64,000 bases of DNA from Octopus bimaculoides (Eukaryota). Location: positions 22,172,363-22,236,362 of the forward strand of contig NC_068983.1 of NCBI RefSeq assembly GCF_001194135.2, written 5' to 3'. The notes beneath the pieces are model-generated. The model saw only the letters and a list, made by a program, of their open reading frames with translations, was not told the DNA's origin and did not search any database. Made by a program: the position numbers and the translations under genes. Position 1 is the stretch's first letter, and every line of letters starts with the position of its first letter. Below, piece by piece: positions 2,014 through 60,204 of the stretch.

Positions 2014-3435
2014 ATGTATACAAAATATTGACATTGACTTCAAAGTTTCACTAAAACAGGTTTCTCAATCATTTACAAATCAATAAATGAAATACCAATC
2101 CAGAGACAGAAAGACAGATGTTTTTCATTGGATAAAAACAACCACCATTAACTAAGCATAGGGACTCATTACATAATTAATATATATATATATATATATA
2201 TATATAGCAATAAGAAAATGGAGGGGAATATGTGGTATTCATCAACTTGCAGACATTGTATTATGTCAATTTACCTGTATATTTTTCAACTAAGAGGACA
2301 ATAAAACAATATACAAACACATGTGACATATTATATCATATCAGTAATTAAAAAGGACATCTAGTGACCGAAGATGGGACAATGTCTTACAGCTGTTTCA
2401 GTTTATCTATATAACTCCATTAAGCTGAAGTAATTGATAGATGAAATCAGACTACCCATGACCCATTAGGTCACCAAAAAAGTCTGAGTTTCCCGGCAAT
2501 GGAGTTTTGTTTTGTGGGGTTTTTTCTTCTTTTCTTTTCCAACTTATTTCACATGCTTTCAATGTGACAATGTGGCATCGAAATCACGCAAAATGGCTCC
2601 TTTCACTAGAAAAGGAAAGATTTGGCTGCTATTTCTTGCACACCCTACTACCATGTAACAGGTATTTCGGGTCCTTTATCGCAAGTAGCTGTTACATGGT
2701 AGCAGGACATGCTAAAAATAGCAACCAAATCTTTGGAGGTGAGATAGGTTGAATGCACCCAGAAAAAAACCTATCGGAAAAAAATTGTTTCACACCAAGG
2801 TTACAAACAGGTCTTTTACAAAATATTCACCATATTTTTAAAGTCATTTTCACTTTAAAATAATTTAAAATATTGTCTGTTTAAAGAAAGCTAAAATATA
2901 AATATTTATTGTACAAACAACTTACATTTTTGAAATCACATTCACTTAAAAATATTTCTAAATGATTAAAATATTGTTTTTGAAAATAGAAACATTTACT
3001 GTAAAAAACAAAAATCGTATTTTTTCTTTGCCAAGTCATTGTGCCTAATCGAAAGGTAAGAATTTCTTCACTTTCAGGATTAAGCTATTTCCGGAATATT
3101 TTCCCTTTATGCACCGTTTTGTATATTTATACCCAAAAAATCCCAACTATCTTCATAACCATTTGTCCGATTTATACAAAATTTGCTTTATTCTGTTCAT
3201 ATTAACATTTTACATTTCAAGGGCAACTGGGTAACATTNNNNNNNNNNNNNNNNNNNNNNNNNNNNNNNNNNNNNNNNNNNNNNNNNNNNNNNNNNNNNN
3301 NNNNNNNNNNNNNNNNNNNNNNNNNNNNNNNNNNNNNNNNNNNNNNNNNNNNNNNNNNNNNNNNNNNNNNNNNNNNNNNNNNNNNNNNNNNNNNNNNNNN
3401 NNNNNNNNNNNNNNNNNNNNNNNNNNNNNNNNNNN

Positions 3436-3613
3436 TACTTGTTTCAGTCATTTGACTGCAGCCATGCTGGAGCACCGCCTTTAGTCAAGCAATTCGACCC
3501 CAGGACTTATTCTTTGTAAGCCTAGTACTTATTCTATCGGTCTCTTTTTGCCGAACCGCTAAGTTACGGGGACATAAACACACCAACATCGGCTGTCAAG
3601 TGATGTTGGCAAA

Positions 3614-3831: not shown

Positions 3832-4253
3832 TATTAATTGAAAAAAAGTCCAGCTAAACAGTGATTTGTGCGAAGTTGCAGAATGAAATACTGGCCTCAA
3901 AAACACGTAAGAGACAGCATCAGGAAAAGTATTTGTCTGTAAAATACAGCAATAACAAACACCATTCCACCCATGCCAGCATGGTTAAAGAATGAACATA
4001 AAAACATAAAAGCAATGATGATGAATGATCGGTTACTTATATACATAAATCTGGTCTTTGTTCAAAGGGTTATGTTTTTTTTATTGGTCTTTGAAGTACT
4101 TACGTTTATTAAGTCCTTTCATAGACATCAAGGTATATGCCACATCATGGATGTCAGAATCTGTAAAACATAAATAATAAAAGTAAAACGACAGTGATAA
4201 TATTAACAAAATAACTACAAATTTACTTATACTATTACTACTACTACTACTAC

Positions 4254-6125: not shown

Positions 6126-7352
6126 AGCATTCAGCAAAAAAGCTAAATCCTCAGATACAAGATAAATCCAACAATGATGAGAACTACACAATTCAATGCA
6201 GTCTCCTTGTTGTAAGAGAGTGTGGTAGATGTGATGGGAAGGAAAAATTGCTTGCTATTTTTATCAGGTTATGAAACAACTTAGAGACACCCTCAATTTA
6301 TTAGCTTAGTTGCAAATAAATCTCCAGTGATGCCTCTACTAGCTGACTACTAATGAGACTCACTTTCATCATTTCATATTCACTAAAATTCAATCAAATC
6401 TACACATATGTTATTTACACAACTCTACCACTACTTTCCTTTCATCATTCTTTATACATTACTATTCAACTGTTTCTTAATTCAGTATCTTCACTCATGT
6501 ATCGTATTCCTTTCAATTTAGTCAGCATCTAAAACTCTCTCATTCATTCACTCACTCACTCACCCAGTTATAATAATGCATGATAGTTAGACTCACCTGT
6601 ATCACAGCCAGACTGAGCTAACCTTTTGCTTAAAAATGGGAAGAGATCTGGAAGAAACAAAAAGATATTTTTTCAAATTTAAAAACTTAAACGGATTTAT
6701 TTACACGTCAATATCATTGCCATTATCAATCAACATCATTTTTACCACAACCATTCTAAGAATACTTTCATTACCATTTCATCATCATTGATTTTACATC
6801 CATTATTTCTACTAACAAAGGTTGGCCTAGCTTGCAGTACAGTAGTGTTTTACACATCCTCACTAAATGTTTGCAGCACAATTACTATGACAACACTGCT
6901 CTTTCAATGCAGTTCAATTCTTTTCTTTCTTAGTGACGTTAATGCTTCAAAATGTGTTGGAATTTCACACCTAGACATCCTCTATATCAACTTCTCCAAT
7001 GGCACAGACAGATGCATTTATGAAGGACACCAGTGCTGAAGAAATTACTTTCCTGTTCCAGAACGTTCTCACTTCCTTTTCTCTCTCTTTTAATTGTTCA
7101 TTCTCAATAAATCCAAAAGGAATTTATGATAAATGTTAGTTTTACATGAGTCCATCTCTACATCAGTGGTCCTCAACTGGGCTTCCAAAAGACCCTTGAT
7201 TGTCCTTTATGTGTAATGAGTTGCTTACACAAAATATTTTAATTACTAAGACAATTTCTAATAATATTTAATTATAAAAATACAGTAGGGTCTTTTTTTT
7301 ATATACATATAGAGTGACTATACACTTGCACACATATACAATACACTCATAA

Positions 7353-10365: not shown

Positions 10366-11039
10366 ATCTATGTCCATAGAATTATACATGTTCACCTTAC
10401 GAAATTCCCTGTTGGTTGTTTTTTGTATATAATATATATTTTTATCTATTGAAGGTTTCTTTTATTTCAATATTGCTTTCCCATCTTTTACTTAATCTTT
10501 TGTTGAATATATATATATCTATATTTCAATGAAACAAAGTATCACTTATTCTGGGCATAAAACAATACGTCATGCACTAGTTAAAATAGAAAGAACTTGC
10601 ACACTTACGAGAAAGTGAAAGGCTGTTAGGGCTAAATTTGGGGGCCAGTGGCACAGGTTTCACATTGCTGCAATGAGAAAAATTAAAACAATGTTAGTTA
10701 TAAAAGCATAAAAAAAAATAACCGACAAAAAGGAAAAAGTGTTAATTATTACTTCTAATATAGACATGAAAGGGAGGGAATAATTAATAAGAATGACAAC
10801 AATCCTTCCCCCGGACTGTCACTAGTACTTATTTTATTGACTGCAGAAGGATGAAAGTTAATGTTCCCTGACTGAGACCATATTTGAACCCAGAATGTGA
10901 AGAAATACACAGAATTAAATCTTGCAAGCATTTTGTCAAAAAAACAACAATAATCATTTGTAATGCATTTACAAGGCCTACAATTTTGAGAGAAAGGGTT
11001 GGCCAATTAAGTTGATGACAGTAAGTAACTACAGTTGCT

Positions 11040-11830
11040 TTAATTAGGGTCTTCAACACTCAATGTCCATGTCACACTGCCATGCAGGAATGCACTTTGC
11101 ACACAAACACATACAACCTACACTTGACCTTGAGGGATAAGCCCTTTCCTGCCAGCAGAAGTAATAGTGCTCTGAACATTGACTAGGCCATTCTTATTCA
11201 AGTTACCACATTTTTAGAATAATCACCTCCACTGCTAATTTGGTTAACCAAGGAGCAAGATCTATCAACTACTACTAGGGAGCTGTCTGGGTATTTCAGA
11301 AACTCTATTATTGCATACTCTTAGTGTTTACTACCCCAGTGCACCTGTTGCATATGAGCCTACCTTTTTTGTAAGCTTACCTTTGACCCCTCTACATCTT
11401 TTGTACGTTCATTTGACTACACAGGTACACCATGCAGAATTTCTACCTGCTCCTTTACTGATGGAAAAGCTTGGCCATTTCCCTGATGTTATAAGTGTTC
11501 TGTCATTCTTCCTATTTACAAAAACTGTCGTTTTCACTAAGTTTATTTTAAGGCCCTTCAATTCCAGATTTTGCGCTTCCCTATCTGAAATTTCAGTTTC
11601 AAACTTCAGAATTTGCTACAAGAGCTAAGTGTAGAGTATACAAAAGTTCCCAAGGGGAACCAATTTTAAATCATTTTATAATGCTTGAAGGATTATAACT
11701 AAGGGGGCTGAGAACTGGGTCCTGATGTCCCCTCACCTGCACACTAAATTCATTGTTGAACACTCTTTCATACATAGCTTGTATGGCCTTCACAAGCCAT
11801 TCACCTATTTCTAGCAACCAGTAAATCGAT
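11040..11830 (-). mobile_element. Degenerate RTE-clade reverse transcriptase fragment
   Basis: Frameshifted translation gives GEWLVKAIQAMY, HQDPVLSPL, VIILQAL, FKIGSPWELLY(TLH)LALVA (decayed YADD), NLELKGLKINLVKT and SGKWP, in RTE RT order. Confidence 0.8.
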
Positions 11831-13084: not shown

Positions 13085-13506
13085 GGCGCAGGAGTGGCTG
13101 TGTGGTAAGTAGCATGCTTATGATCCACATGGTTCCGGGTTCAGTCCCACTGCGTGGCACCTTGGGGCAAGTGTCTTCTACTATAGCCTTCTGCCGACCA
13201 AAGCCTTGTGAGTGGATTTGGTGGACGGAAACTGAAAGAAGCCCTTCATACATGTGTGTGTGTGTGTGTGTGTGTGTGAGTGTGTGTGTGTGTGTGTGTT
13301 TGCCACCCACCCCACCCCCATCGCTTAACAACCGATGCTGGTGTGTTTACGTCCCCGTAACTTAGCGGTTCGGCAAAAGAGACCGACAGAATAAATACTA
13401 GGCTTACAAAGAATAAGTCCTGGGGTTGATTAGCTCGACTAAAAAGGTAAGTGCTCCAGCATGGCCACAGTCAAATGACTGAAAAAAGTAAAAGAGTAGA
13501 AGAGTA
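13085..13506 (+). mobile_element. Family A SINE, full-length and young
   Basis: GGCGCAGGAGTGGCTGTGTGG A box, GGTTCAGTCCC B box, internal (TG)n, AGTAAAAGAGT tail; CpGs largely intact. Confidence 0.9.
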
Positions 13507-20265: not shown

Positions 20266-20915
20266 TCAATGTGAATACCCGTCAGAGTGTAAGTATCTTG
20301 AGAGAAAAGCTGAACATTAGAAGCATCAGTTGTGGCGTGCAAGAGAGACGATTGCGCTGGTATGGACATGTGGTGAGAATGGAGGAGGATAGCTGCGTGA
20401 AAAAGTGCCACACCCTAACAGTTGAGGGAACCCGTGGAAGAGATAGGCCCAGGAAGACCTGGGCTGAGGTGGTGAGGCAAGACCTTCGTACATTGGGCCT
20501 CACCGAGGCGATGACTACTGACCGAGACCTTTGGAAATGTGCNNNNNNNNNNNNNNNNNNNNNNNNNNNNNNNNNNNNNNNNNNNNNNNNNNNNNNNNNN
20601 NNNNNNNNNNNNNNNNNNNNNNNNNNNNNNNNNNNNNNNNNNNNNNNNNNNNNNNNNNNNNNNNNNNNNNNNNNNNNGCACATAAAAGACACCATTTCGA
20701 GCGTGGCCGTTTTCGTGCGGGTGACACGTAAAAGCACCCACTACACTCTCTGAGTGGTTGGCGTTAGGAAGGGCATCCAGCTGTAGAAACTCTGCCAAAT
20801 CAGACTGGAGCCTGGTGTTGCCATCCGGCTGCACCAGTCCTCAGTCAAATCGTCCAACCCATGCTAGCATGGAAAGCGGACGTTAAACGATGATGATGAT
20901 GATGATGATGATGAT
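20266..20915 (+). mobile_element. 5'-truncated RTE LINE: ORF C-terminus, 3' UTR and (GAT)n tail
   Basis: ORF 20271+ gives RRLRWYGHVVRM...GRDRPRKTWAEVV...DRDLWK; 3' end CATGGAAAGCGGACGTTAAAC(GAT)n; flanked by (ATT)n on both sides; contains an N gap. Confidence 0.9.
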
Positions 20916-22599: not shown

Positions 22600-23124
22600 N
22601 NNNNNNNNNNNNNNNNNNNNNNNNNNNNNNNNNNNNNNNNNNNNNNNNNNNNNNNNNNNNNNNNNNNNNNNNNNNNNNNNNNNNNNNNNNNNNNNNNNNN
22701 NNNNNNNNNNNNNNNNNNNNNNNNNNNNNNNNNNNNNNNNNNNNNNNNNNNNNNNNNNNNNNNNNNNNNNNNNNNNNNNNNNNNNNNNNNNNNNNNNNNN
22801 NNNNNNNNNNNNNNNGGGGGGGGGGGTATTAGTTGGTTATATGAACATCAGTGCTCAATACTGGAAGGACAAAAGGCAAAAATTGACCCCAGTAGAATTT
22901 GAACTCTGAATGACAAAATGCCACTAACCATTTTGTCTAGCATGCTAATGATTTGTTATGATATTATAATTCTTGTAATAGACACAGGGCCTCATTCAAA
23001 TTTAATACAGAGGGAAAGGGAGGACTGTCCTCAAATCCAAAACCTATCTCTCAATTTGCTAGAAATAATAGCCAAATCTCTCTTAAATTGCACCTTACTT
23101 GTCAAAAATATGAATGATGTAGTA

Positions 23125-24027: not shown

Positions 24028-24443
24028 CACACATCTCAATTTAGCTAACATTCTCTCTTTCTCTCTCTCTCTCTCTTTCTCACTCACTCACTCACACACA
24101 ATATATACTATCTATCACACACACACACACACACAACACTTCAACAGTGTTTGGACTTTTCTAAGCAATTTAGCTTTAGCCTGTTACCATAGAGACTGGG
24201 CTAAATTTAGAATTGGTTTTTCACTGAGACTCCACCTCNNNNNNNNNNNNNNNNNNNNNNNNNNNNNNNNNNNNNNNNNNNNNNNNNNNNNNNNNNNNNN
24301 NNNNNNNNNNNNNNNNNNNNNNNNNNNNNNNNNNNNNNNNNNNNNNNNNNNNNNNNNNNNNNNNNNNNNNNNNNNNNNNNNNNNNNNNNNNNNNNNNNNN
24401 NNNNNNNNNNNNNNNNNNNNNNNNNNNNNNNNNNNNNNNNNNN

Positions 24444-24491
<48 letters not shown>

Positions 24492-25194
24492 GAGTGGAGA
24501 CGTACACTCTTGTAGCATATGTTTTGAGAGTGTGCGTGTGTGTCAGGGAGAGGGAGAGCATTTCTGAGTGAGTGATGGTGATGGAGTGCACTCTTATAGC
24601 ATGTTTTGAGTGTGTGTGTGTGTGTCTGAGAAAGAGAGACAGAGAGAAAGAAAGAGAGCATTTCTGAGTGGGTGAGAGAGCTGATGAATGTAAGTGGTTG
24701 GATGCACTCATTCTCTTGTATCTGCATGCACGTGTGTAAGTGTGTGTGTGTGTGTGTGTGCATGAATTTTTAATATTACACGCATATATTTATGCATATA
24801 CTAGTACTATAAATAATAGATGCTGATAAGTTTAGATGCACCGTGATACATACAACTATACATACATATTTATATATATATAGATATGCAGACAAACATA
24901 TACTTCTGTATATGTGTGTGTATATATACACTTGCACACTTATAATGTGTGTGTGTGTGTGTGTGTATGCGCGTGCGTATATATTCACACCTATAAACAC
25001 ACACACACGTGCATGCATGCATAAACAAAGTTACAAACATATACGTGCATGTGCACACGCACACACATTATTTTGATAATATAATTATTTTAGACAAGGC
25101 CTCGATAGAATTGAACACAGAAAGAGTAAACTGTCCTAGGACCAAAAACCCAGATTGAAAGGCATCACACACCCACAGCAAATATGGGAGACAA

Positions 25195-31428: not shown

Positions 31429-32066
31429 TAAACTAAAGAACACTGAAGACTAAATGCTTTTAAAAAGATGGCAATGGACGAGAATTAACAGAAAATATGG
31501 TTAGGAATGTTAACACAAACAAAACCGAAGAACCCTGATCGAGAGCTTTACGTCCTGATTTCTGTTGGAAATTAACCACTTCAAATGGCCAAGTACTTGA
31601 GTGGTTTTTTTACTTTATCAACCTTGATATGGTGAAAGGCAATACTGACTGAACCCAGAATGTAAAAAAACTGGAACAAATACAGGTTTCTTCACAAAGC
31701 TACGGCTACTGCTCAGTGCCATAGCAGAGATCTGCCCATAGTGCCACACAGTGAGATGGAACCCAAGACCACATGACTGAGAAGTAAGCTTCTCAACTGC
31801 AACAGCCACACGTGAGTCTTTATGATTTTGTCAATCCACAACCTGCTGATACTTGTTTCGTAAACATACCTTTTTACCTTTTACTTGTTTTACTCATTGG
31901 ATTGTGGTCATGCTGGGGCACCAGTATGAAGGATTTTAGTCAAATGAATCAACCCCACTATTTATTAAGCCCAATATTTATTCTATCGGTCTCTTTTTGC
32001 CAAACTGCTAAGATATTTGGGGGGGGGGGACACAAACATAAAGACACACACAAACACATATATATA

Positions 32067-32444
32067 TTCTTTTATTCTTTTACTTGTTTCAGTCATTAGA
32101 CTGCAGCCATGCGGGAGCACCACCTTGAAGGATTTTAGTTGAACAAATTGGCCCCAAGACTTATTTCTTAAGCTTAGTACTTATTCTATCAGGCTCTTTT
32201 GCCAAACTACTAAGTTACAAGGATGTAAACACACCAACACTGGTGGGGAGGGTGACACAAAGACACAAAGACACACAGACACACAACAGGCTTTTTCAGT
32301 TTCTGTCAACCAAACCAACTCACAAGTCTTTTGTTGGCTCCAAGGCTTAGAAGACACTTGCCTAAGGTGCCATGCAATGGAACAGAATCCAAAAGCCATG
32401 TAGTTAGGAAGCAAACTTCTTACCAAACAGCCTTGAATGTGCCT
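32067..32444 (-). mobile_element. Family A SINE
   Basis: Collinear with 44601-44994; CpG-decayed. Confidence 0.75.
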
Positions 32445-34399: not shown

Positions 34400-34757
34400 T
34401 CTTATTTTTTATGCGTTTCAGTCATTAGACTGCAGCCATGCTGGGGTACCACCTTGAAGAATTTTAGATCAATGAATTGACCCCAGTACATTTTTTTTAT
34501 GTCTTTTGCCGAACCATTTAGTTACAGGGATGTAAATATACCAACATTGGTTGACAGGCAGTTGGAGAGGGAGAGACAAACACAAAAACAAAGATACATA
34601 CATACAGACAGACAGACAAATCAGGCTTCTTTCAGTTTCCGTGCACCAAATCTGCTCACAAGGATTTAGTCAGCTCAAGGCTATAGTAGAATGCACTTGC
34701 TCAAGGTGCCATGCAGTGGGACTGAACCTGTGGTTGAAGAGCAAGCTTCTTACCACA
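34400..34757 (-). mobile_element. Family A SINE
   Basis: Collinear with the family; internal (CATA)/(GACA) tract. Confidence 0.75.
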
Positions 34758-35902: not shown

Positions 35903-36372
35903 ACGCGTGTGTGTCAGTCCTTTTAATTTCTCTATACGTCTACCTCTCCGACTGGCCTTTTACACATTGCTCTTCCTCTATCTCTCCCTCCAATACACAT
36001 AAATATACAAATATGTATGTAACATATTTGCAGACATATCTATAATATACACACACATACAAACATACATCATTATCATATACACATACATATATATATG
36101 CACACACACAAACAAGTGCAACACACAAACACCCTGCATACAGATATACAAAAATATATATGTAATATATTTTTACTTACATATCTATAAGACACATATA
36201 TATATTACACACACACATCATCATCATTATATAAACACACAAACACATGCAATGCATAAACACCAGTTAACATACATAGCCATAAATATACAAATATAGG
36301 TAACATATTTACTCATCTACAATACACACATACATACATACATACATACACATATCATCATAAACATATATA

Positions 36373-36737
36373 TTCTTTTCTTCTTTTACTGGTTTCAGTC
36401 ATTTCACTGTGGCCATGCTAGAGCACCACCTTTAGTCAAACAAATTGACCCCAGTACTTATTCTATCAGTCTTTTTTGCTGAAACGCTAGGTTACAGACC
36501 AACACCAGTTTGTCAAGTGATGGTTGGGAGACAAACATATATATATATATATATATGCACACACAAACACACACGACAGGCTTCTCCCAGTTTTCCATCT
36601 ACCAAATCCATTCACAAGGCTTTGGTCAACCTGAGGCTTTAGTAGAAGACACTTGCCCAAGGTACCATGTAGTGAGACTGAACCCAGAACCACGTGGTTG
36701 AGAAGCAAGCTTCTTACAACACAACCACACCTGTGCT
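36373..36737 (-). mobile_element. Family A SINE
   Basis: Collinear with the family; internal (TA)/(CA) tract. Confidence 0.75.
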
Positions 36738-38575: not shown

Positions 38576-39004
38576 TCCTTAATGTGTGCATGGGTTGCGT
38601 GGAGTTTATTTGAAGAAAAGTTTCTATGGCCAGATGCCCTTCTTGTCACCAATTATCACCCATTTCCAAGCAAGGTAATATTTCCCTGTGACCAGAGAAA
38701 TGTGAGAAATGCTCTTACAAGATATTGGAAATGACACTAANNNNNNNNNNNNNNNNNNNNNNNNNNNNNNNNNNNNNNNNNNNNNNNNNNNNNNNNNNNN
38801 NNNNNNNNNNNNNNNNNNNNNNNNNNNNNNNNNNNNNNNNNNNNNNNNNNNNNNNNNNNNNNNNNNNNNNNNNNNNNNNNNNNNNNNNNNNNNNNNNNNN
38901 NNNNNNNNNNNNNNNNNNNNNNNNNNNNNNNNNNNNNNNNNNNNNNNNNNNNNNNNNNNNNNNNNNNNNNNNNNNNNNNNNNNNNNNNNNNNNNNNNNNN
39001 NNNN

Positions 39005-39989: not shown

Positions 39990-40421
39990 GAGAAGACCCG
40001 GCAAGCCAAGTAAGATCGTTGCCAGTGCCCCTGGACTGGCTCTTGTGCGGGTGGCACATAAGATGCACCATTTTGAGCGTGGCCATTGCCAGTACCGCCT
40101 GACTGGCCTTCGTAGGATTTTCGAGCGAGATCGTTGCCAGTGCCCCTGGACTGGCTTTTGTGGGTGGCACATAAAAGACACCATTTCGAGCGTGGCCGTT
40201 GCCAGTATCGCCTGACTGGCCTTCGTGCAGGTNNNNNNNNNNNNNNNNNNNNNNNNNNNNNNNNNNNNNNNNNNNNNNNNNNNNNNNNNNNNNNNNNNNN
40301 NNNNNNNNNNNNNNNNNNNNNNNNNNNNNNNNNNNNNNNNNNNNNNNNNNNNNNNNNNNNNNNNNNNNNNNNNNNNNNNNNNCATGGAAAGCGGACGTTA
40401 AACGATGATGATGATGATGAT
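39990..40421 (+). mobile_element. RTE LINE 3' UTR with ~115-bp internal tandem duplication
   Basis: Repeat units begin at 40013 and 40128; ends CATGGAAAGCGGACGTTAAAC(GAT)n after an N gap. Confidence 0.8.
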
Positions 40422-44600: not shown

Positions 44601-44775
44601 TCTCTTTTACTCTTTTACTTGTTTCAGTCATTTGACAGTGGCCATGCTGGAGGACTTATTCTTTGGAAGCCTAGTACTTATTCTATCAGTCTCTTTTGCC
44701 AAACTGCTAAGTTACGGGAACATAAACACACCACCATTGGTTGTCAACTGATGCTGGGGGGACAAACACAGACAC

Positions 44776-47536: not shown

Positions 47537-48009
47537 CATCATAGGCGCAGGAGTAGCTGTGTGGTAGGTAGCTTGCTTACCNNNNNNNNNNNNNNNNNNN
47601 NNNNNNNNNNNNNNNNNNNNNNNNNNNNNNNNNNNNNNNNNNNNNNNNNNNNNNNNNNNNNNNNNNNNNNNNNNNNNNNNNNNNNNNNNNNNNNNNNNNN
47701 NNNNNNNNNNNNNNNNNNNNNNNNNNNNNNNNNNNNNNNNNNNNNNNNNNNNNNNNNNNNNNNNNNNNNNNNNNNNNNNNNNNNNNNNNNNNNNNNNNNN
47801 NNNNNNNNNNNNNNNNNNNNNNNNNNNNNNNNNNNNNNNNNNNNNNNNNNNNNNNNNNNNNNNNNNNNNNNNNNNNNNNNNNNNNNNNNNNNNNNNNNNN
47901 NNNNNNNNNNNNNNNNNNNNNNNNNNNNNNNNNNNNNNNNNNNNNNNNNNNNNNNNNNNNNNNNNNNNNNNNNNNNNNNNNNNNNNNNNNNNNNNNNNNN
48001 NNNNNNNNN

Positions 48010-48086
<77 letters not shown>

Positions 48087-48848
48087 GTATATATGAGCAT
48101 ATTTATGTATGCACGTGCATGTATATATACACTCACACACACACATACACTTATACGAATTTCATTTTTTTACATATTTTAATAAACTGCACAGGCGCAA
48201 ATGAATTCCTGACATAAATCCAGTGGCATATCCCACCATTACTGTTGATGACATCAGGAGGCCGAATACTGACAACAGGCTTTAAACAGCACACTACAAG
48301 GTGCATACCTCAAAATAACATTATAACACACACACACACATACACACTGGAGGTGTACTTGCTAAGCAAATTGTAGTGACCTACTGCACTGATTAGACAA
48401 AGCACCAAGGAAAGTATAAGTAGAGCAGCCAGCATACACACAGTANNNNNNNNNNNNNNNNNNNNNNNNNNNNNNNNNNNNNNNNNNNNNNNNNNNNNNN
48501 NNNNNNNNNNNNNNNNNNNNNNNNNNNNNNNNNNNNNNNNNNNNNNNNNNNNNNNNNNNNNNNNNNNNNNNNNNAGAGAGAGAGAGAGAGGGAGAGAGAA
48601 AGAGAGAGGGAGAGAGAAAGAGAGAGAGAAACAGAGATAGATAGATATAAATAAATATAGATATATAAATATATGTGTATATATATAAAATATGATATAA
48701 TAGATTACATCATTAGCTTAGCTAATGACGTCTCTAGACTGGTTTCACACCCTTAAGTAGTTGGTAAGTAGTCACAGTCAGTTGCTCCTTAGTGTGGAGC
48801 AGTGAATGGGGGGGGGGGGTGATTAAAACGGAATTAAGACGTTGGTTG

Positions 48849-48883
<35 letters not shown>

Positions 48884-49199
48884 ACAAAAGTGGTGGTGTA
48901 GATGGTGAGAAGTTGGTGGAAAAAGTTAGCTATAATCAGCAATAGCGTTGATGACGACGACGATGTCAATGTGTGCAAGTCAACCTTCACTAAACAAAGA
49001 TCTATATATAATAAATGGCTATTCCAGCCGTGGCCATCCTTCCTTAAAGTACTGTAGATCTTAATTCTTCAATGTTTCCTTACCTACGACGGTGGGAGAA
49101 CAGAATTTGAAGGAATTCTTGGCTGTTGTTTCTAGTGTGTCGAGCGACTGACTACGTTGGAGCTCCCGTCGTCCCAGGCCACGCCAAGCAGATATAATA

Positions 49200-49331
49200 C
49201 AGGGTGTCCACAAAGTCTGGGTACATGGAGATTAACACATACTTTAAGAAATTATTATTTCTTACATTTAATTGTTTATGTTATGATTTTATTTACTCCA
49301 CTCCGTGTACCCACACCTTGTGGACACCCTG
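49200..49331. mobile_element. Tc1/mariner-type MITE, 132 bp
   Basis: TA-CAGGGTGTCCACAAAGTCTGGGTACA...TGTACCCACACCTTGTGGACACCCTG-TA: 26-bp TIRs with 2 mismatches and a TA target duplication. Confidence 0.9.
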
Positions 49332-50391
49332 TATGACCAAAGCCATTCCAGCAATTGTCACCTAGCCTTTTTACCCGGAACCATATTAGCCAACGTCTTT
49401 TTTAAATTTTTTTTATTTTTTTGCTTGACCGGAATCCTATTATTTCCAGCAGGTCGGGTGACTATGTTGAGGAGAGAAGAGAGAGATGTGTGTGTGTGTG
49501 TGTGTAAGTAATGATATAATGGCCACAGTGAAGTTGCTGAACAATAACAATAAATGGTGGTGGTGGTGATGGTGGTGGTGCTATCGGCTGCTGACAACGA
49601 TGGTGATTGTTATTCATTAAGTAGATGATGATGGTGGTAGTAAGGCTGGTAGTGGTGGTGGTGGTGGTGGTGGTGGCGGCGACGGGGATAGATGTAGTGA
49701 AGGTGACGATGGATAAATAAGAGCAGCAGAAAACGTAAAGCAAATAACGCTAGCAGCAATTGTTGGCGGCGGCGGTGATGACGCCGGCGGCAATGGTGAG
49801 CAGGAAGCTAGAGGCGCGAGGTGTAATAAGTGGTGAATTGATCCGACTTAATGATATTTAAGACAGATTTAAACAGGTAAACTGTACTAATGAAACACAC
49901 AGAGATACAGATACACACACATACACCTATGAGTGTGTATGTTTGTATAAACACCTCGGATAAACTCTACCAGCTGACGCAAAAAAATAACAATATAACA
50001 TCTGTAATGAGCGAATAAAAAAGACACACACACACACATACATACATACATAACACCATTAACACGTTGGCTAAAGCATGACAAAAATAGATAGAGATCA
50101 TTCGTTTGACTAACAGACATATAGATACATTTCGGCTAACAACAACAACGAGGAAACAATACGGCTATTTTGAGTTATAGAAATCACAGCAAGTAAGAAA
50201 TAGCCAAAGCAATGAAAACAAACCGCAAAAATAAACTGCTGTAGAGCTGTTAACGCAGTTGTCGATTATTTTTCCTTTTTACACTGTTTTTTTTTTTCTA
50301 TTGTAGTTTTTCTAACCTTAGAAGATACAATAACAGTAAATAGATATACATCTGTAATACAGAAACTAATGCACATACATAACACAATACA

Positions 50392-51837
50392 ATGGATACG
50401 AACAGCAATTTAAATCAATATCTCACTATCAGAACCTACGTGAAAAAACAAACATTAAGGAATATTAGCAGCAAGAATGAGGGAATTAGCGGACAGTCGA
50501 TCGAAGAAATGCCAGAACCAAACGAAAACGGCACCAGTGTTCAGAGTAGCAGCAAAGAAAATCTTTCTGTAATCTTGAACAACCGAGAGTTCAGCCATGG
50601 GGTAAAGAATGGATGTATCGATGTGTTAATGAATAACAACAAGAATAAGCTATTAGAAGTCAGACAACAATTTGGACAACAGAAAAGGATCGAAGACTGC
50701 TCTAATCTCGAGAATAGTCTCCATGCCGATGATAATGGGACGAATGAAAGTGATGCGGGAAGTGACGAAGAACAAGATCTTACTTTCAGTGGAGAAAGCC
50801 AGCCAACATCAGAAGGAGAGGACAAAACTACGTATTACAGTTCAACGAACAATGCCGAAACGAGTTCGATATCCGATGAGACAGACTTGACTCTTCAAGC
50901 AAACAGTGATATGGAAGAAGACTGTGTAAACTTTGCAGACGATAATGAACACTGGTATGTGAATGAACCCACGTGGAAATATGTGTGGAAGTCATATTCC
51001 GATAACGACAAGACGAAAGGCGAATATGTCTGGACCAAAGTTAAAAACGAAAATGGCAGCAAGGAGATTTATTGGGGAAATATACGAAATATGGAGGATG
51101 AATGGATACCGCAAACAGTTCCTATTAAAGAGAAAAGAAGCTGGGTGCCGAAACTAATAGCAGGGAAAGAACATGGCGAAACTATCTGGTACTACATGAT
51201 GCCATATATACCCAAAACAGTTGAAGCTAGGAAACGAACATTGGAACACATTCCACAACTAATCAAAGATAAAGGGACAAGCAGTTGGCTTTCTCAGTTG
51301 AAGTTTACGAAGAAGGGAAATAAAACCGTCTGGTACTGCAAGCTAACACCGGCACCTGAAGAACCAGAAGATAAAAAGAGCATTTCCTCAACAACAACAA
51401 CACCACGGATTAATAGTAATAATGGTCCAATGTTGGCTGCTGCTCCTGTAATACTTCCCCTACCAGAATTTTCAGCTGCCAAGGAAGAAAAAACCAAAGA
51501 TAAAAATTCTAATTTACCGGAACTGAGGAAAATAGCAGGTAAGCCGAGTCAATGGTTTTCAAAGTTAATCAAAGACACCGACAACACTCAGGAACCGAAA
51601 TGCAGCCAAGCAACCGATGTTTCGTCAATACACGAACCTGTTCCTCGCAATGTATCTGAAGAGGTAAGACACAACAACTGCGATGGTAAAAAACACAACA
51701 AGCTTCAGTTACTGGAAAATATAACACCTTTCTCGAAAGAAGCAGGCTTAAAAAAGAAAAAAATACAGACAGACAGTAAGAGTGTTTGGTACAAAGATAT
51801 TCTCCAAGAATCAGACGATTTCCATGACAAAAAATAA
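50392..51837 (+). CDS. Single-exon 481-aa protein of unknown function with an acidic disordered N-terminus and Trp-rich repeat core
   Basis: 1446-nt stop-free, gap-free, non-microsatellite ORF in ~35% GC background; good start context (ACAATGG); internal protein repeat; AATAAA downstream. Confidence 0.8.
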   Translation: MDTNSNLNQYLTIRTYVKKQTLRNISSKNEGISGQSIEEMPEPNENGTSVQSSSKENLSVILNNREFSHGVKNGCIDVLMNNNKNKLLEVRQQFGQQKRIEDCSNLENSLHADDNGTNESDAGSDEEQDLTFSGESQPTSEGEDKTTYYSSTNNAETSSISDETDLTLQANSDMEEDCVNFADDNEHWYVNEPTWKYVWKSYSDNDKTKGEYVWTKVKNENGSKEIYWGNIRNMEDEWIPQTVPIKEKRSWVPKLIAGKEHGETIWYYMMPYIPKTVEARKRTLEHIPQLIKDKGTSSWLSQLKFTKKGNKTVWYCKLTPAPEEPEDKKSISSTTTTPRINSNNGPMLAAAPVILPLPEFSAAKEEKTKDKNSNLPELRKIAGKPSQWFSKLIKDTDNTQEPKCSQATDVSSIHEPVPRNVSEEVRHNNCDGKKHNKLQLLENITPFSKEAGLKKKKIQTDSKSVWYKDILQESDDFHDKK

Positions 51838-52269
51838 CGCACGCACACAAATGAAGGGCACTCGCGCGCACACACTCACAAAACAGAAAGATGAATACAC
51901 ACACACACACACTGCACTTGGCTTAGCACTTTGCCTGTCCTGCATATCATATGTGACACCCAGGACATATTTATCTGACATTCTTGTACCAGATTAAATT
52001 GGGATTTCTGAAAGGAAAGCTTTATATTACCCAGAACGTGTGAAACAAACTAAAAGTCTGAAAACAAGCGTGGAAGTTAAGGGCAAAACTTAAGGAAATG
52101 CTCTGGACAGGCAAAGGGTTAACAAATCGTGCTCTGTCTCCCTAGCATGAAAAGTAAACTAATCATGAAATATCAGTTAAGTAGAAAAAAAGAAACTGCC
52201 ATAGCCAATTTACATACATGCAAAAAAATATCTCCCTATTTTGTCACTTAGGTTTCAAAAAGTCTGTAA

Positions 52270-52275
52270 AATAAA
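52270..52275 (+). terminator. Candidate polyadenylation signal for the 481-aa gene
   Basis: AATAAA about 430 nt after the stop; another near 52360; weak evidence in AT-rich DNA. Confidence 0.3.
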
Positions 52276-52579
52276 GCCATTTTCACACCACACAACTGCT
52301 CCCTGTCGTCTGACATGAAACTGTTCATATTTCACTATTTTAATCTTAGTTTCATGTTCAAAATAAACCAAAGCAACATTTACGCTGATCTCATGTATTT
52401 CTGAGTTCAAATAGCACACCAAAAAAAAAAGAAGAAAAGAAAAAGAAAAATCTTTAAAAAAAAAAGCCGCCAAATCGTGGAGCTACATTTTCTAACCATG
52501 CCTTTCACACACACACATACACACACGAAGAATGGTAACAGTGACTTCGAAGTTTCCGCCTGCTAGCTTTCATTGTTTC

Positions 52580-52612
<33 letters not shown>

Positions 52613-55284
52613 GACATAAAAACATTAATACAGTCATACATATCTTTCGACTTTTTCTATCCTAAAAGATTATTTAACTCAATATTTATATGTTGTAATT
52701 TATAGCTTCATCTACTTCGAGTTCTACACTTAAAAATGATTTCATATACACATACAAAACAGAAAGAAATTTAAAATACTAGGTCAGCACCTTAAAGATA
52801 TTGCATATAAGAAAACGTATCATTTCTGGAGCAACTTCTACAAAGAGGTTTGATCTGCTGGAAATAGCAGTAAAATTTCGTTAGCAATCACACCGTTTTT
52901 TTGTTTTTTTTTTAAGTAATGATACCTTGAATAATGTGATCTTCGATACATTATGCATGCAGGATAAGGCGAGATATCCCAAATGGATGTTTTTGGTCAT
53001 ACGATCAATGCGCTGCAACCTTGCGGTACACTTTTATTCTTTTCAAAAATCGGCGGCACACCTGAACTAAAAATATAGCTAAAAGTATAGCGAAAAAAAC
53101 TATATTCAGGTTACACTGCGGCACACCAGTATGTCACGGCATACCGAACTCTGTCATAGATCTATTTGTTCAGAGCTGAACTGACTGTTAAATAATAGCC
53201 TCGGAATTCCGGATTAAGTACCCCTGCCCCAAACATTTAAGAGGATTGCCTGTCCACCAATATAAATTTTTTTTTTTTTTTTTTTTTTGTTTCTTAATGT
53301 GAGAAACGAACAAATGTGTAAAAGAACGCGTCCTCAAGATATACTTGTGTTGCATATAAAACCTGTATTACTGACAGTGTCTTCTGCTAGAATTACACCG
53401 GGCCGGGTCAAATGATATCCTATGTAAATTTGGTAGAAGGAAACTTCTGAAAGCACGTCGTATGTGTGTCTTTATTTACCTATTGTCCGCCGTCCGTTGC
53501 TTGACAACCGGTGTTGCTCTGTTTACGTTCACTAATGTAGAGGCTCGACAAAAAGAAAGCGATGGAATAAGTACTAGACTTTTAAAAAAATCTACGGGGA
53601 TCGATTTTATCGACTCTTTAAAACCTCCAAAAAGGTGCCCTAGCATGGCCAGTCCAATGACTGAAACTAAAAAAAAAAAAGAGTTAGTGTGTATGTATGT
53701 GTTTGTGCGCGCATTTTTCTGTTACTTTAAACTTTAATAAAAGTTATGAGAAGCAGCAAACACTACCTTCTTTATAAAACACACAAGCACATATTTATGT
53801 ATTTTGAAAGAATACAAACGAAATTGAGAAAATAACTGTTTTCATTTTGCTTACTACAGAGATTTACTTCTGTTTGTGATACATGTTTTTCTTGTCCGCC
53901 CCGCCGGCCCGACGCTTCTTTTCTTTCAAGTTCCATAAATACACACACACAGAGAAAGAATGAAGTTAATGGTTTATCGTACAAACATAAAACACAACAA
54001 AACAGATTAATGAACTTAAAATACGTTGAGAATGTTTCTTCTTAATAGATTTACAACAGTGTTCTCTCCCTCTCTCCATAAGTTGATATTAAGTTTCGAT
54101 TGAAGACAACTTAATTAGCGTTAAATTAAACATTCATTTTATAAGAGCTATCTAATTAGCTCTCTCCTACACACACACACACACACACATACATACATAC
54201 ACACTGTATGTATACACACACCACGTGTACATGCCTGAGAGGGAGAGAAGTTTCTGTTTACACATATTAACCACTTCCCTAATACTATTAACCGTGTGTG
54301 CGTGTGTATGTTAGTTTAACAGTCAAACGCTCGATCAATCTCCTATCACAGTTCGCTATCTTAACTATATCGATAGCTAGGGAACATGAATGTGTCAAAA
54401 TATATATATGGAAGAATTATACATCAATAATTCTATAATACCAGCCCGGTTCCCAACCAATCTACGTCTGGCCATTTTCTTGTCCTGACCATCGATCTGC
54501 TTAGTTAACCGCTATACACAGCAAGATTAAGCAACGTGCTATAAAGAAGACCCTTGATGTTAGTGAACGCATAAACGGTTTTTATTTGTTTGTTGGTTTG
54601 CATACTTCCCTCCCCCCTTTCTTTCTTTCTTTCTAACTTACATAAAATACACATAACTTTTTCCAGAAGCCACGTGTTTCATTCGAATTATTTCTACCAG
54701 AAATATTAACAAAATAACAGTGTTTCCCACATAGACATTTAGGTTTATCTATCACTCTTTGCAAGGAAGTTGTCCACCTAATGGTGACTGTCGCTCTAAT
54801 TAGATGTTTAACGTTAGATTAAATGATTGTACACATCACTAATCACACGTGGTATATAATTATGGACCAGAATCTACTTCCAACTGGCAGACAAAGGAGA
54901 TCAGGACGACTGACAAACTGTGGTCAGAAATTGAACCGTATTGATTTGGAACGTTACTTTTATTCCTGGCGGCTAACTGGACTGTCGAGAAATACAACGA
55001 AACATCAGTAGCAAAATTAACATACGGACGGAAAGTCCAATACTTTTATTATTAGGAACATGTCTTTCTTAAATATATAACGTGAATGAGGTATACTTAA
55101 ATGACATTGAGGGGTAAATCTATATTGCTGACAACGGATTTCAGTTTGGAAACTCACAGCCAAGAATTAAACAAAATCTTGAGAATGGGGGAAATGGTAA
55201 CATTCAATGCTTTAACCATCAAGAATCAATATACAACAAAAACATTTATCTATGTATACCTAAAATATGTTGTGTGTATGTGTA

Positions 55285-60052: not shown

Positions 60053-60204
60053 TATTGATTACTATTGGAGTTTGTTTGAGCTGTCTGATTACCGGCCAGC
60101 ATCTGTAATTGATGGTAAGGGTGGTATGGCGTTTTACGTAGGGCCTGGAGCAGGTTGGGTCGATAATCAGGATCAATGCACCAGAGAGAACCCTTGCCAA
60201 TACT
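60053..60204 (-). CDS. FoxN2/3: FoxN2/3 forkhead transcription factor, internal exon (end of forkhead domain)
   Basis: TTTTCAG acceptor and GTAAGT donor; [32 protein letters not shown] closely matches FOXN3 [29 protein letters not shown]. The 3' boundary could instead be one of two weaker upstream GTAATC donors. Confidence 0.92.

What the first reader, a model, noticed from the sequence alone, without database searches (positions are those of the whole stretch)
50392..51837. Intronless 481-aa orphan gene in a CpG-retaining island, antisense to FoxN2/3
Seen: the only long clean ORF in 64 kb, with no motif of any transposon or family I recognise. It has an acidic Ser/Asn/Glu-rich N-terminus, a Trp-rich core and a Lys-rich tail. 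A single-exon gene is unusual where the neighbouring FoxN gene has small exons in large introns. Inference: a lineage-specific gene, retrogene, or horizontally acquired or viral sequence, possibly nested in a FoxN intron.
Basis: partly seen in the sequence, partly recalled or inferred. Interest (0 to 1): 0.72.

Follow-up and report, generated by a model that had tools for sequence, protein, structure and literature searches.

The report
Conserved cephalopod-only gene inside FoxN intron
The 481-codon open reading frame is a real, single-exon protein-coding gene kept under purifying selection in octopuses, an argonaut and two more distant relatives; it has no detectable relatives elsewhere, probably sits antisense inside an intron of FoxN2/3, and its function is still unknown.

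Summary
ORF 50392-51837 (+) is 481 codons and the longest clean ORF in the window (chance expectation about 1e-10). It lies in the window's only CpG-retaining patch (48.6-55.0 kb, CpG o/e 0.81 against 0.29 elsewhere).

It is a real gene. Uninterrupted orthologues exist in a second Octopus-like species (87% aa), in Argonauta hians (about 50-60% aa, same Fox neighbour and orientation) and in two more distant, unidentified lineages (about 50% in the core). dN/dS is 0.22-0.26 overall and 0.08-0.15 in the core.

Pfam, PDB sequence and profile searches, Foldseek, a HMMER profile scan of 1.84 billion representative proteins and a viral-contig scan found nothing else. The gene is single copy and has no LTRs, TIRs or TE domains.

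The protein has no signal peptide or TM segment. An acidic, Ser-rich, apparently disordered N-terminal half is followed by a basic Trp-rich core with two significant tandem 39-aa repeats predicted to form beta-hairpins.

A FoxN2/3 forkhead exon (60053-60204, minus) and three conserved minus-strand micro-exons (10.6, 6.6 and 4.1 kb) join in phase. The gene is therefore probably nested antisense in a roughly 49-kb FoxN2/3 intron.

Verdict: a validated, taxonomically restricted gene of unknown function. Retrogene, viral and horizontal-transfer readings are unsupported. Interest is moderate.

The parts
50392..51837 (+). Complete single-exon CDS (481 aa plus stop) of the conserved cephalopod-restricted gene
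   Evidence: ORF listing. First in-frame ATG with good context. Orthologues are collinear and uninterrupted. dN/dS 0.22-0.26.
50572..50946 (+). Acidic Ser/Asn/Glu-rich region (aa 61-185), net charge -20, predicted to lack regular structure. It contains octopod-conserved motifs (ENLSVILNN..IDVLMNNNKNKLLE; EEQDLT.SGESQ; SSTNNAETSSI)
   Evidence: Composition, alignment, AF2 pLDDT about 30 with no secondary structure.
50947..51357 (+). Basic Trp-rich conserved core (aa 186-322; 10 Trp, pI 9.4). It is the only part conserved in all five family members
   Evidence: Alignments A2 and A3. Core dN/dS 0.08-0.15. Three predicted beta-hairpins plus a helical linker at low confidence.
51097..51216 (+). Repeat unit A (aa 236-275): E-W-I-P-Q..S-W-V-P-K-L-I..G-E-T-I-W-Y-Y..P
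   Evidence: Internal duplication scores 64 against 22 +/- 5 for shuffles, 0 of 2000 reach it. Unit HMM.
51241..51357 (+). Repeat unit B (aa 284-322): E-H-I-P-Q..S-W-L-S-Q-L-K..N-K-T-V-W-Y-C-K-L-T-P
51358..51834 (+). Mixed-charge, Lys-rich C-terminal tail (aa 323-481). It has weak half-unit echoes (aa 381-393 QWFSKLIK; aa 462-467 SVWYKD), a KKKK cluster and a conserved terminal WY(K/E)D motif
48575..55000 (.). CpG-retaining (presumably germline-unmethylated) patch that encloses the gene and about 1.8 kb upstream. It is the only such patch in the window
   Evidence: CpG o/e 0.81 against 0.29 elsewhere. Interpreted using the octopus methylome paper PMC9476566.
52270..52367 (+). Two AATAAA poly(A) signals (52270, 52362), 0.43-0.53 kb after the stop. 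These are candidate 3' ends; an A-rich tract follows at about 52418-52470
   Evidence: Pattern scan, sequence. No transcript evidence.
60053..60204 (-). FoxN2/3 exon encoding the C-terminal end of the forkhead domain ([30 protein letters not shown]...). Acceptor ttttcag|, donor |gtaagt, ends two bases into a codon
   Evidence: Hits named 'forkhead box protein N' and 'Foxn3'. The orthologous Argonauta exon belongs to a gene model carrying PF00250.
10609..10667 (-). 59-nt minus-strand micro-exon. Its block is 96% identical to Argonauta. Canonical ag|..|gtaagt. It starts with the single base that completes the codon left open by the Fox exon
6597..6647 (-). 51-nt minus-strand micro-exon. Its block is 91% identical to Argonauta. 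Canonical splice sites, in phase with its neighbours
4104..4160 (-). 57-nt minus-strand micro-exon. Its block is 95% identical to Argonauta. Canonical splice sites, in phase

Best explanation
The ORF is a genuine, single-copy, single-coding-exon gene restricted to cephalopods. It sits on the strand opposite FoxN2/3, most probably inside a roughly 49-kb intron of that gene (10.67-60.05 kb). It has its own unmethylated, CpG-retaining promoter and gene patch within an otherwise CpG-depleted host gene body.

The product is an intracellular protein with no signal peptide or membrane segment. Most of it is probably disordered.

Its selected part is a basic, Trp-rich module of about 135 aa. That module is built from tandem units of about 39 aa (consensus [WH]-I-P-x-L..S-W-x-x-x-L..K-x-G-x-T-[VI]-W-Y..P), and each unit is predicted to form a Trp-anchored beta-hairpin.

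My best mechanistic guess is a binding or adaptor protein. The hairpin module would be the ligand-binding surface, for a protein partner or a nucleic acid. The long acidic Ser-rich arm and the Lys clusters point to a nuclear, phosphorylation-regulated role. The lack of germline methylation points to restricted rather than broad, high expression.

Shown: gene reality, conservation, selection, repeat architecture, CpG status, absence of known relatives, and conserved synteny with Fox.

Inferred: nesting within FoxN2/3, unmethylated state, disorder, hairpin fold, nuclear adaptor function, and restricted expression.
For: - Reality and selection. The ORF is far beyond chance. Frames are intact and collinear in four relatives. 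dN/dS is 0.24 (Fisher p 5e-12), 0.22 and 0.26 in three independent pairs, and 0.08-0.15 in the core.
- Single exon at three genomic loci.
- Restricted distribution. Only P0002-P0005 were found by the word-indexed search of 5.8 billion clusters and by the full HMMER profile scan of 1.84 billion representatives.
- No known family. Pfam, PDB sequence and profile searches, and Foldseek all gave nothing.
- Not mobile. It is single copy in the window, has no flanking LTRs, TIRs or TSDs, and has no viral relatives. Position and orientation relative to the Fox exon match Argonauta: about 8.2 kb here, about 9.1 kb there.
- Nesting. The Fox exon and three conserved micro-exons lie on the minus strand, have canonical splice sites and join in one open frame. 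The first micro-exon has a conserved acceptor, so it needs an upstream exon. No other conserved minus-strand block lies in between.
- Protein features. Maximum 19-residue hydropathy is 1.19. The repeat is significant in all members. Hairpins were predicted in both AF2 runs.
- CpG patch. [quoted passage not shown]
Against: - No expression evidence. The 1.6-kb Logan contigs end in microsatellites, so they may be genomic or transcript-derived.
- Both AF2 models are of low confidence (pLDDT 33 and 51.5). The hairpin fold is only a prediction.
- The nuclear-adaptor function rests on composition alone. No motif or domain match supports it.
- Nesting is not proven. The Argonauta annotation splits the flanking exons into two gene models (281 aa with Forkhead, and 531 aa). 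A phase match alone has a 1-in-3 chance.
- I found no full-length FoxN2/3 comparator to confirm that the micro-exons encode its C-terminal part.
- CpG retention in the CDS is seen only in the two Octopus-like sequences (0.84 and 0.87). It is 0.46 in Argonauta and 0.24-0.32 in the distant relatives. Methylation status, and any expression inference drawn from it, is therefore not a conserved property of the gene.
- The species of P0002, P0004 and P0005 could not be identified. 'Cephalopod-restricted' rests on Octopus and Argonauta plus the cephalopod-like composition of L004.
Confidence: 0.6

Rival explanations
1. Ancient retrogene. A processed mRNA copy of an intron-bearing parent gene landed in the FoxN2/3 intron and became the working copy. 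The parent was then lost or diverged beyond recognition.
For: The CDS is uninterrupted in a genome whose neighbouring gene has tiny exons in very large introns. An A-rich tract of about 50 nt lies roughly 50 nt after the second AATAAA.
Against: No paralogue or parent was found in any species, including the annotated Argonauta proteome. No target-site duplication flanks the gene. The A-rich tract is not conserved in Argonauta, and it could not have survived from an insertion that predates the split from the distant relatives. Being intronless does not by itself indicate retroposition.
Confidence: 0.1
2. Domesticated transposon or endogenous viral gene, such as a capsid- or gag-like or accessory ORF, now fixed as a host gene.
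For: There is no known cellular family. The CDS is intronless. The genome is rich in repeats, with TE-like fragments elsewhere in the window.
Against: No TE or viral domain appears in Pfam. No relative appears in IMG/VR or in the protein library, which is rich in metagenomes and viruses. The gene is single copy, has no terminal repeats, and keeps its position and orientation next to Fox in Argonauta. The repeat-hairpin architecture does not resemble known capsid or gag folds, although the model is of low confidence.
Confidence: 0.06
3. Horizontally acquired bacterial gene.
For: The CDS is intronless, and its CpG content differs from the surrounding DNA.
Against: No prokaryotic homologue appeared among 1.84 billion representative proteins. 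GC content (0.40) is close to that of the host. The gene has a eukaryote-type start context and poly(A) signals. CpG retention extends well beyond the ORF on both sides and is absent from the orthologues of other lineages.
Confidence: 0.02
4. Independent gene lying between two separate minus-strand genes. FoxN2/3 would end at 60.05 kb, and another gene would start near 10.67 kb, as the Argonauta annotation has it. The gene would then be intergenic and convergent with Fox rather than nested.
For: The Argonauta annotation calls two models: 281 aa with Forkhead ending at the stop that overlaps the donor, and 531 aa starting near the first micro-exon. An in-frame TAG overlaps the Fox exon donor in both species.
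Against: The 10.6-kb micro-exon has a conserved canonical acceptor and no in-frame ATG, so it cannot be a first coding exon. The Argonauta model starts 11 nt upstream of that acceptor, which looks like 5' truncation. The Fox exon donor (gtaagt or gtgagt) is conserved and in phase with the micro-exon. CpG depletion is equal on both sides of the island, as expected for one methylated transcription unit.
Confidence: 0.25
5. Chance or decaying ORF with no function.
For: None beyond the lack of annotation and of expression data.
Against: Chance expectation is about 1e-10. The frame is intact in five sequences that span saturated synonymous divergence. dN/dS is significantly below 1.
Confidence: 0.01

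Closest known systems
Taxonomically restricted ('orphan') genes of coleoid cephalopods, as discussed in cephalopod genome papers (for example PMC9023564, listed but not read in detail)
   Same: There is no detectable homologue outside the clade and no known domain. The gene is conserved within the clade under purifying selection.
   Different: This locus is a specific, verified case with a defined internal repeat architecture and conserved synteny. Its expression and function are unknown. The protein already exists as an unnamed predicted entry in UniRef and MetaClust.
Nested intronic genes (a gene lying on the opposite strand within a host gene's intron), a well-known arrangement in animal genomes (own knowledge)
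   Same: A small single-exon gene lies antisense within a very large intron of a developmental transcription-factor gene. It has its own CpG-retaining promoter patch, and the arrangement is conserved between Octopus and Argonauta.
   Different: Nesting is inferred from splice-site phase and conservation, not from transcripts. No relationship between host and guest expression has been shown.
Aromatic beta-hairpin repeat modules: choline-binding/CW_binding_1 repeats, MORN repeats, WW domains and PQQ beta-propeller blades (own knowledge of the families; Pfam models tested)
   Same: The units are short, each predicted as a two-stranded hairpin. Conserved Trp/Tyr residues and a Gly/Lys turn are present (..W...L...K.G.T.WY..). 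The only PDB echo is one blade of a PQQ methanol dehydrogenase (7o6z, E 0.54).
   Different: No Pfam model of these families matches, even at E <= 1. Unit length (39 aa) and Trp spacing (13-15) differ. There are only two full units. The protein is intracellular and eukaryotic. The resemblance is at most analogy.
Myb/SANT tryptophan repeats
   Same: Regularly spaced Trp residues lie in a basic region next to acidic stretches, as in many nuclear proteins.
   Different: Trp spacing is about 13-15 residues rather than 18-19. The predicted structure is beta, not helix-turn-helix. No Pfam Myb/SANT hit was found.

Membership tests
Any curated protein family (Pfam-A) or solved structure | Significant HMM, sequence or fold match | tested here: not met
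   Pfam: only sub-threshold noise (DUF5424 E 0.011 at 16 bits against a cut-off of 25; ATS3 E 0.066). PDB phmmer and profile searches: nothing below E 0.5. Foldseek against PDB: best E 0.095, TM 0.22, from a low-confidence model.
Taxonomically restricted (orphan) gene | No homologue outside the clade in sensitive searches | tested here: met
   Only four relatives were found among 5.8 billion clusters and 1.84 billion representatives. Caveat: the species of three of them are not identified.
Taxonomically restricted (orphan) gene | Evidence that it is a functional coding gene (purifying selection, intact frame in relatives) | tested here: met
   dN/dS 0.22-0.26, core 0.08-0.15, Fisher p <= 3e-7. 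All frames are intact.
Taxonomically restricted (orphan) gene | Transcription and translation | not testable with these tools
   The Logan contigs L001, L002 and L005 end in low-complexity repeats, so RNA and DNA origins cannot be told apart. The run accessions were not found in the literature.
Nested intronic gene (host FoxN2/3) | Host-gene exons on both sides, on the opposite strand, spliced across the guest | tested here: inconclusive
   The Fox exon 60053-60204 and micro-exons at 10.6, 6.6 and 4.1 kb are all on the minus strand, have canonical sites, are in phase and are conserved in Argonauta. There is no transcript, and the Argonauta annotation splits them into two models.
FoxN2/3 (identity of the neighbouring gene) | Forkhead domain with FoxN-type sequence | tested here: met
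   The exon peptide matches fragments named 'forkhead box protein N' and 'Foxn3' at 79-97% identity. The orthologous Argonauta model carries PF00250. The 50-aa exon alone is too short for Pfam.
Retrogene | Intronless CDS | tested here: met
Retrogene | Intron-bearing parent or paralogue elsewhere | tested here: not met
   No paralogue was found in any species. No second copy is present in the window.
Retrogene | Poly(A) remnant and flanking target-site duplication | tested here: inconclusive
   There is an A-rich tract at about 52418-52470, but no direct repeats bracket the gene and the tract has no counterpart in Argonauta.
Transposable-element or virus-derived gene | TE or viral protein domain, terminal repeats, multiple copies, or viral relatives | tested here: not met
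   No such domain. No LTR or TIR. Single copy. No IMG/VR relative. Position is syntenic in Argonauta.
Choline-binding / MORN / WW / PQQ-type aromatic hairpin repeats | Match to the family HMM | tested here: not met
   None of these Pfam families is reported at E <= 1 for any of the five members or for the core. The PQQ-MDH blade match at E 0.54 is not significant.
Unmethylated CpG-retaining domain | CpG o/e near 1 within a CpG-depleted background | tested here: met
   0.81 against 0.29. The methylation state itself cannot be tested here.

The most novel reading that the evidence does not exclude
The protein founds an undescribed domain family: a Trp-anchored tandem beta-hairpin module of about 39-aa units. 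The family would be confined to coleoid cephalopods. It would have arisen, possibly de novo, within or beside the FoxN2/3 intron and been kept under purifying selection since before the octopod lineage split from the lineage(s) carrying P0004 and P0005. It would act as a cephalopod-specific intracellular, probably nuclear, binding protein with its own unmethylated promoter inside a methylated host gene.
Probability: 0.3. Interest if true: 0.55.

Novelty: new member of a known kind. Interest (0 to 1): 0.36.

Why it matters
Cephalopod genomes hold many lineage-restricted genes, and few of them have been checked individually. This case now has a solid evolutionary footing: orthologues, selection, synteny and a defined repeat module. 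That makes it a usable candidate for asking what cephalopod-specific proteins do.

The locus also gives a compact example of an unmethylated guest gene inside a CpG-depleted host gene body in an invertebrate with mosaic methylation. It also flags a probable mis-split FoxN2/3 gene model in the Argonauta annotation.

It does not overturn anything. Orphan genes and nested genes are both familiar categories.

Tried and rejected
1. Pfam on the full protein, the core and all five members: only sub-threshold noise.
2. PDB searches with the sequence, the whole-protein profile, the core profile and the repeat-unit profile: nothing significant.
3. AlphaFold2 on the full length with 3 sequences (pLDDT 33) and on the core with 5 sequences (pLDDT 51.5): too weak for fold assignment. 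The Foldseek hits to kinase lobes at TM about 0.2 were rejected as meaningless.
4. Viral origin: the IMG/VR scan found no relative.
5. The three ultra-conserved 76-80-nt blocks at 4.1, 6.6 and 10.6 kb were first suspected to be miRNA hairpins. This was rejected: folding z-scores were -0.1 to -1.2 and Rfam gave no hit. They were reinterpreted as minus-strand micro-exons.
6. I tried to obtain a full-length cephalopod FoxN2/3 protein to map onto the window. The last large protein search returned only 48-75-aa fragments.
7. I tried to look up the window's own protein for annotated neighbours: it is not on record.
8. I tried to identify the species and library type of SRR11869391, SRR11869384, ERR12370320 and ERZ21867824 from the literature: no hits.
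9. I considered a 5' UTR intron (donor near 49886, acceptor near 50306). The acceptor is replaced by a (TTC)n tract in the close relative, so this was left unclaimed.
10. I looked for the Fox exon or the micro-exons within 10 kb of the distant homologue L004: none found.
Full report

Yes. The six-frame listing shows one ORF at 50392..51837 on the + strand, ATG to TAA, 481 aa. An in-frame stop lies 12 nt upstream, so this ATG is the first possible start. It has A at -3 and G at +4.

With the window's base composition (36% G+C, stop frequency 0.070 per codon), a 481-codon open stretch has probability about 6e-16. About 8e-11 such ORFs are expected in 64 kb on both strands.

Among the other ORFs of at least 130 aa, the two longest (427 and 342 aa, at the 0.4-1.7 kb gap) and most of the rest run through assembly gaps of N. 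The longest gap-free ORF is 181 aa. 'The only long clean ORF' is therefore correct.

- aa 61-185 carry net charge -20.
- aa 186-322 hold 10 of the 12 Trp and have pI 9.4.
- The tail is rich in Lys but also in acidic residues (pI 8.5).

The CpG claim also holds. CpG o/e is 0.84 in the ORF. Over 48575-55000 it is 0.81 (184 CpG against 227 expected). Over the other 54.8 kb it is 0.29 (506 against 1769). G+C is almost equal (0.376 against 0.359), and no other 2-kb bin exceeds 0.57.

**2. Is it a gene?**

The word-indexed search of 5.8 billion protein clusters returned the window's own protein plus two relatives:
- P0002: 477 aa, 87% identical, found on about 1.6-kb Logan contigs from several sequencing runs.
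- P0003: 550 aa, 'hypothetical protein Ahia01_000935200' of Argonauta hians (GAB1606526.1). It is 50% identical by BLASTP and 60% over the alignment.

A full HMMER profile scan of 1.84 billion representative proteins added only two more:
- P0004: 582 aa, on an 81-kb ENA assembly contig.
- P0005: 500 aa, on a Logan contig.

Both align over the core at about 50% identity.

All five sequences are collinear from the first Met to a shared C-terminal WY(K/E)D motif. At the three loci with genomic context (window, Argonauta L003, L004) the CDS is a single uninterrupted exon.

Nei-Gojobori dN/dS values:

| Pair | dN/dS, whole protein | Note |
|---|---|---|
| Window vs P0002 | 0.24 | dS 0.22, Fisher p 5e-12 |
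| Window vs Argonauta | 0.22 | dS about 1.3, saturated |
| P0004 vs P0005 | 0.26 | |
| Trp-rich core, all three pairs | 0.08-0.15 | |

This is a protein-coding gene under purifying selection in at least two separate branches. The window's protein is already present, unnamed, in UniRef and MetaClust.

**3. Is it mobile, viral, retroposed or transferred?**

No TE or viral domain is present. No relative was found in IMG/VR, and no prokaryotic or viral homologue appeared in the profile scan.

The protein has one copy in the window. The flanks hold only microsatellites and unrelated small repeats, with no LTRs, TIRs or target-site duplications around the gene.

In Argonauta the orthologue lies in the same orientation, about 9.1 kb from the same Fox exon. 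The distance here is about 8.2 kb.

No paralogue that could be a retrogene parent exists in any species searched. The only retrocopy-like trace is an A-rich tract about 50 nt after the second AATAAA, and it has no counterpart in Argonauta.

I therefore reject the viral and horizontal-transfer readings and give the retrogene reading low weight.

**4. Surroundings: nested in FoxN2/3?**

On the minus strand, 60053-60204 is an exon (acceptor ttttcag|, donor |gtaagt) encoding [34 protein letters not shown].... Its best database hits are fragments that their sources name 'forkhead box protein N' and 'Foxn3'. The orthologous Argonauta exon belongs to a model carrying PF00250.

Comparison with the Argonauta locus also revealed three blocks of 76-80 nt, at 4.1, 6.6 and 10.6 kb, that are 91-96% identical. 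They do not fold as hairpins and match no Rfam family.

Read on the minus strand, each block is a micro-exon with a canonical acceptor and a gtaagt or gtgagt donor. The exons are 10609-10667, 6597-6647 and 4104-4160, that is 59, 51 and 57 nt.

The Fox exon ends two bases into a codon and the 10.6-kb exon supplies the third. All four exons join in one open frame.

The 10.6-kb exon has a conserved acceptor and no in-frame ATG, so it must have an upstream partner. No other conserved minus-strand block lies between it and the Fox exon. CpG depletion is equally strong on both sides of the island.

The simplest reading is one FoxN2/3 transcription unit with an intron of about 49 kb (10.67-60.05 kb) that contains the gene on the opposite strand.

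This is inference. The Argonauta annotation splits these exons into two models (281 aa and 531 aa), a phase match alone has a one-in-three chance, and I could not obtain a full-length FoxN2/3 comparator. I put nesting at about 0.7.

**5. The protein**

There is no hydrophobic segment (maximum 19-residue hydropathy 1.19), so no signal peptide or membrane span.

The N-terminal half is acidic and rich in Ser, Asn and Glu. It has motifs conserved among octopods, but AlphaFold2 predicts no regular structure there.

The core (aa 186-322) is the only part shared by all five proteins. It has 56 invariant positions, including nine Trp.

The core contains a significant internal duplication: aa 236-275 and aa 284-322 align with score 64, against 22 +/- 5 for shuffles (0 of 2000 reach it). 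The same holds in the other members. The unit consensus is [WH]-I-P-x-L..S-W-x-x-x-L..K-x-G-x-T-[VI]-W-Y..P.

An HMM of the unit finds weak half-unit echoes at aa 381-393 and aa 462-467 in all three octopod proteins.

Both AlphaFold2 runs place a beta-hairpin on each unit, plus one more on the preceding GEYVW/IYWGN segment, with a short helical linker. Confidence is low: pLDDT 33 for the full length and 51.5 for the core.

Foldseek and the PDB profile searches gave nothing significant. The only echo is one blade of a PQQ methanol dehydrogenase at E 0.54.

**6. How it most likely works**

Shown: a conserved, selected, intracellular protein whose constrained part is a basic tandem-repeat module rich in Trp and Tyr.

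Inferred: the repeats form Trp-anchored hairpins that together make a binding surface. The long acidic Ser-rich arm and the Lys clusters (KKKK here, KKKKKK in P0004) are typical of nuclear, phosphorylation-regulated adaptor proteins. My best guess is therefore a nuclear binding or adaptor role, at perhaps 0.3 probability.

[quoted passage not shown] Retained CpG therefore suggests a gene that is not broadly and highly expressed in the germ line.

That inference is limited. CDS CpG o/e is 0.46 in Argonauta and 0.24-0.32 in the distant relatives, so the methylation state is not a conserved feature of the gene.

**7. Comparison with what is known**

The locus belongs to two familiar categories: taxonomically restricted genes, and genes nested antisense in a host intron.

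It is not a member of any curated protein family that I could test. The Pfam models for choline-binding, MORN, WW, PQQ and Myb/SANT repeats do not match. Unit length and Trp spacing also differ from those families. Any resemblance to them is analogy at the level of an aromatic hairpin.

**8. Limits**

- No expression evidence is available. The Logan contigs end in microsatellites and could be genomic.
- The species behind P0002, P0004 and P0005 are unidentified. L004 has cephalopod-like composition (33% G+C, CpG o/e 0.29) but no Fox exon within 10 kb.
- The window's own species is not given. The argonaut orthologue, the gap-rich assembly and the presence of the protein in UniRef fit an Octopus genome, but this is an inference.

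**9. Verdict**

The finding is real, and its main interpretation (a lineage-specific gene, probably nested in FoxN2/3) is supported. The more exotic alternatives are not.

It is a well-founded uncharacterised gene with a previously undescribed repeat module. That is of moderate interest (0.36) and counts as a new member of a known kind.

Noticed in passing
window 4104-4160, 6597-6647, 10609-10667 (minus strand); L003 979-1053, 1631-1709, 2484-2563: Three micro-exons (57, 51 and 59 nt) lie in blocks 91-96% identical at the nucleotide level between Octopus and Argonauta. The forkhead-domain exon is only 82% identical, and synonymous sites in the neighbouring gene are saturated. Such nucleotide-level constraint on coding micro-exons is unexplained. 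It may reflect splicing regulation or RNA-editing structure. The Argonauta annotation places them in a separate 531-aa model that looks 5'-truncated.
   Followed up: partly
window 49197-49334: A 138-nt palindromic element has 34-nt terminal arms (91% complementary) around an AT-rich centre and is flanked by TA on both sides. It looks like a small MITE and sits in the CpG-retaining patch about 1.1 kb upstream of the ORF.
   Followed up: partly
window 53500-53707 (copies near 3441-3600, 13323-13497, 32049-32244, 34400-34497, 36344-36427, 44659-44747): A short dispersed repeat of about 170-200 nt (68-76% identity among copies) is present in several copies in both orientations across the window. 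It is SINE-like and unclassified.
   Followed up: no
window 11048-11600 and 20280-20543; L003 4211-5068, 15931-16809, 21084-21611: Repeat fragments with coding-level similarity (40-53% aa by tblastx) are shared between the window and several places in the Argonauta locus. They are probably relics of a transposable element family common to octopods. There is no Pfam match, and part of one copy seems to be included in the Argonauta Fox gene model's range.
   Followed up: partly
window 49540-49800: A (GGT)n/(GGC)n-rich tract with high CpG lies about 0.6-0.85 kb upstream of the ATG. It is followed by a possible splice donor (acag|gtaaac near 49886). It could be a promoter or a 5' non-coding exon of the gene, but this is not supported by the close relative's contig.
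   Followed up: partly
window 52418-52470: An A-rich tract of about 50 nt begins about 50 nt after the AATAAA at 52362. It could be a microsatellite or a poly(A) remnant. It is not conserved in Argonauta.
   Followed up: partly
window 673-1604, 3239-3435, 20543-20677, 22600-22815, 24239-24443, 38741-39004, 40233-40382, 47582-48009, 48446-48574 and smaller: Twelve runs of N (10-932 nt) mark assembly gaps. They create most of the spurious 'long ORFs' in a mechanical ORF listing. One gap (48446-48574) lies at the left edge of the CpG-retaining patch, so that boundary is uncertain.
   Followed up: yes
L004 11749-12507: In the distant homologue's contig, a 252-aa ORF abuts the gene's stop codon. 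It has no Pfam match, and part of it resembles window 24873-25031 (43% aa). It is probably a repeat-derived ORF rather than a gene.
   Followed up: partly
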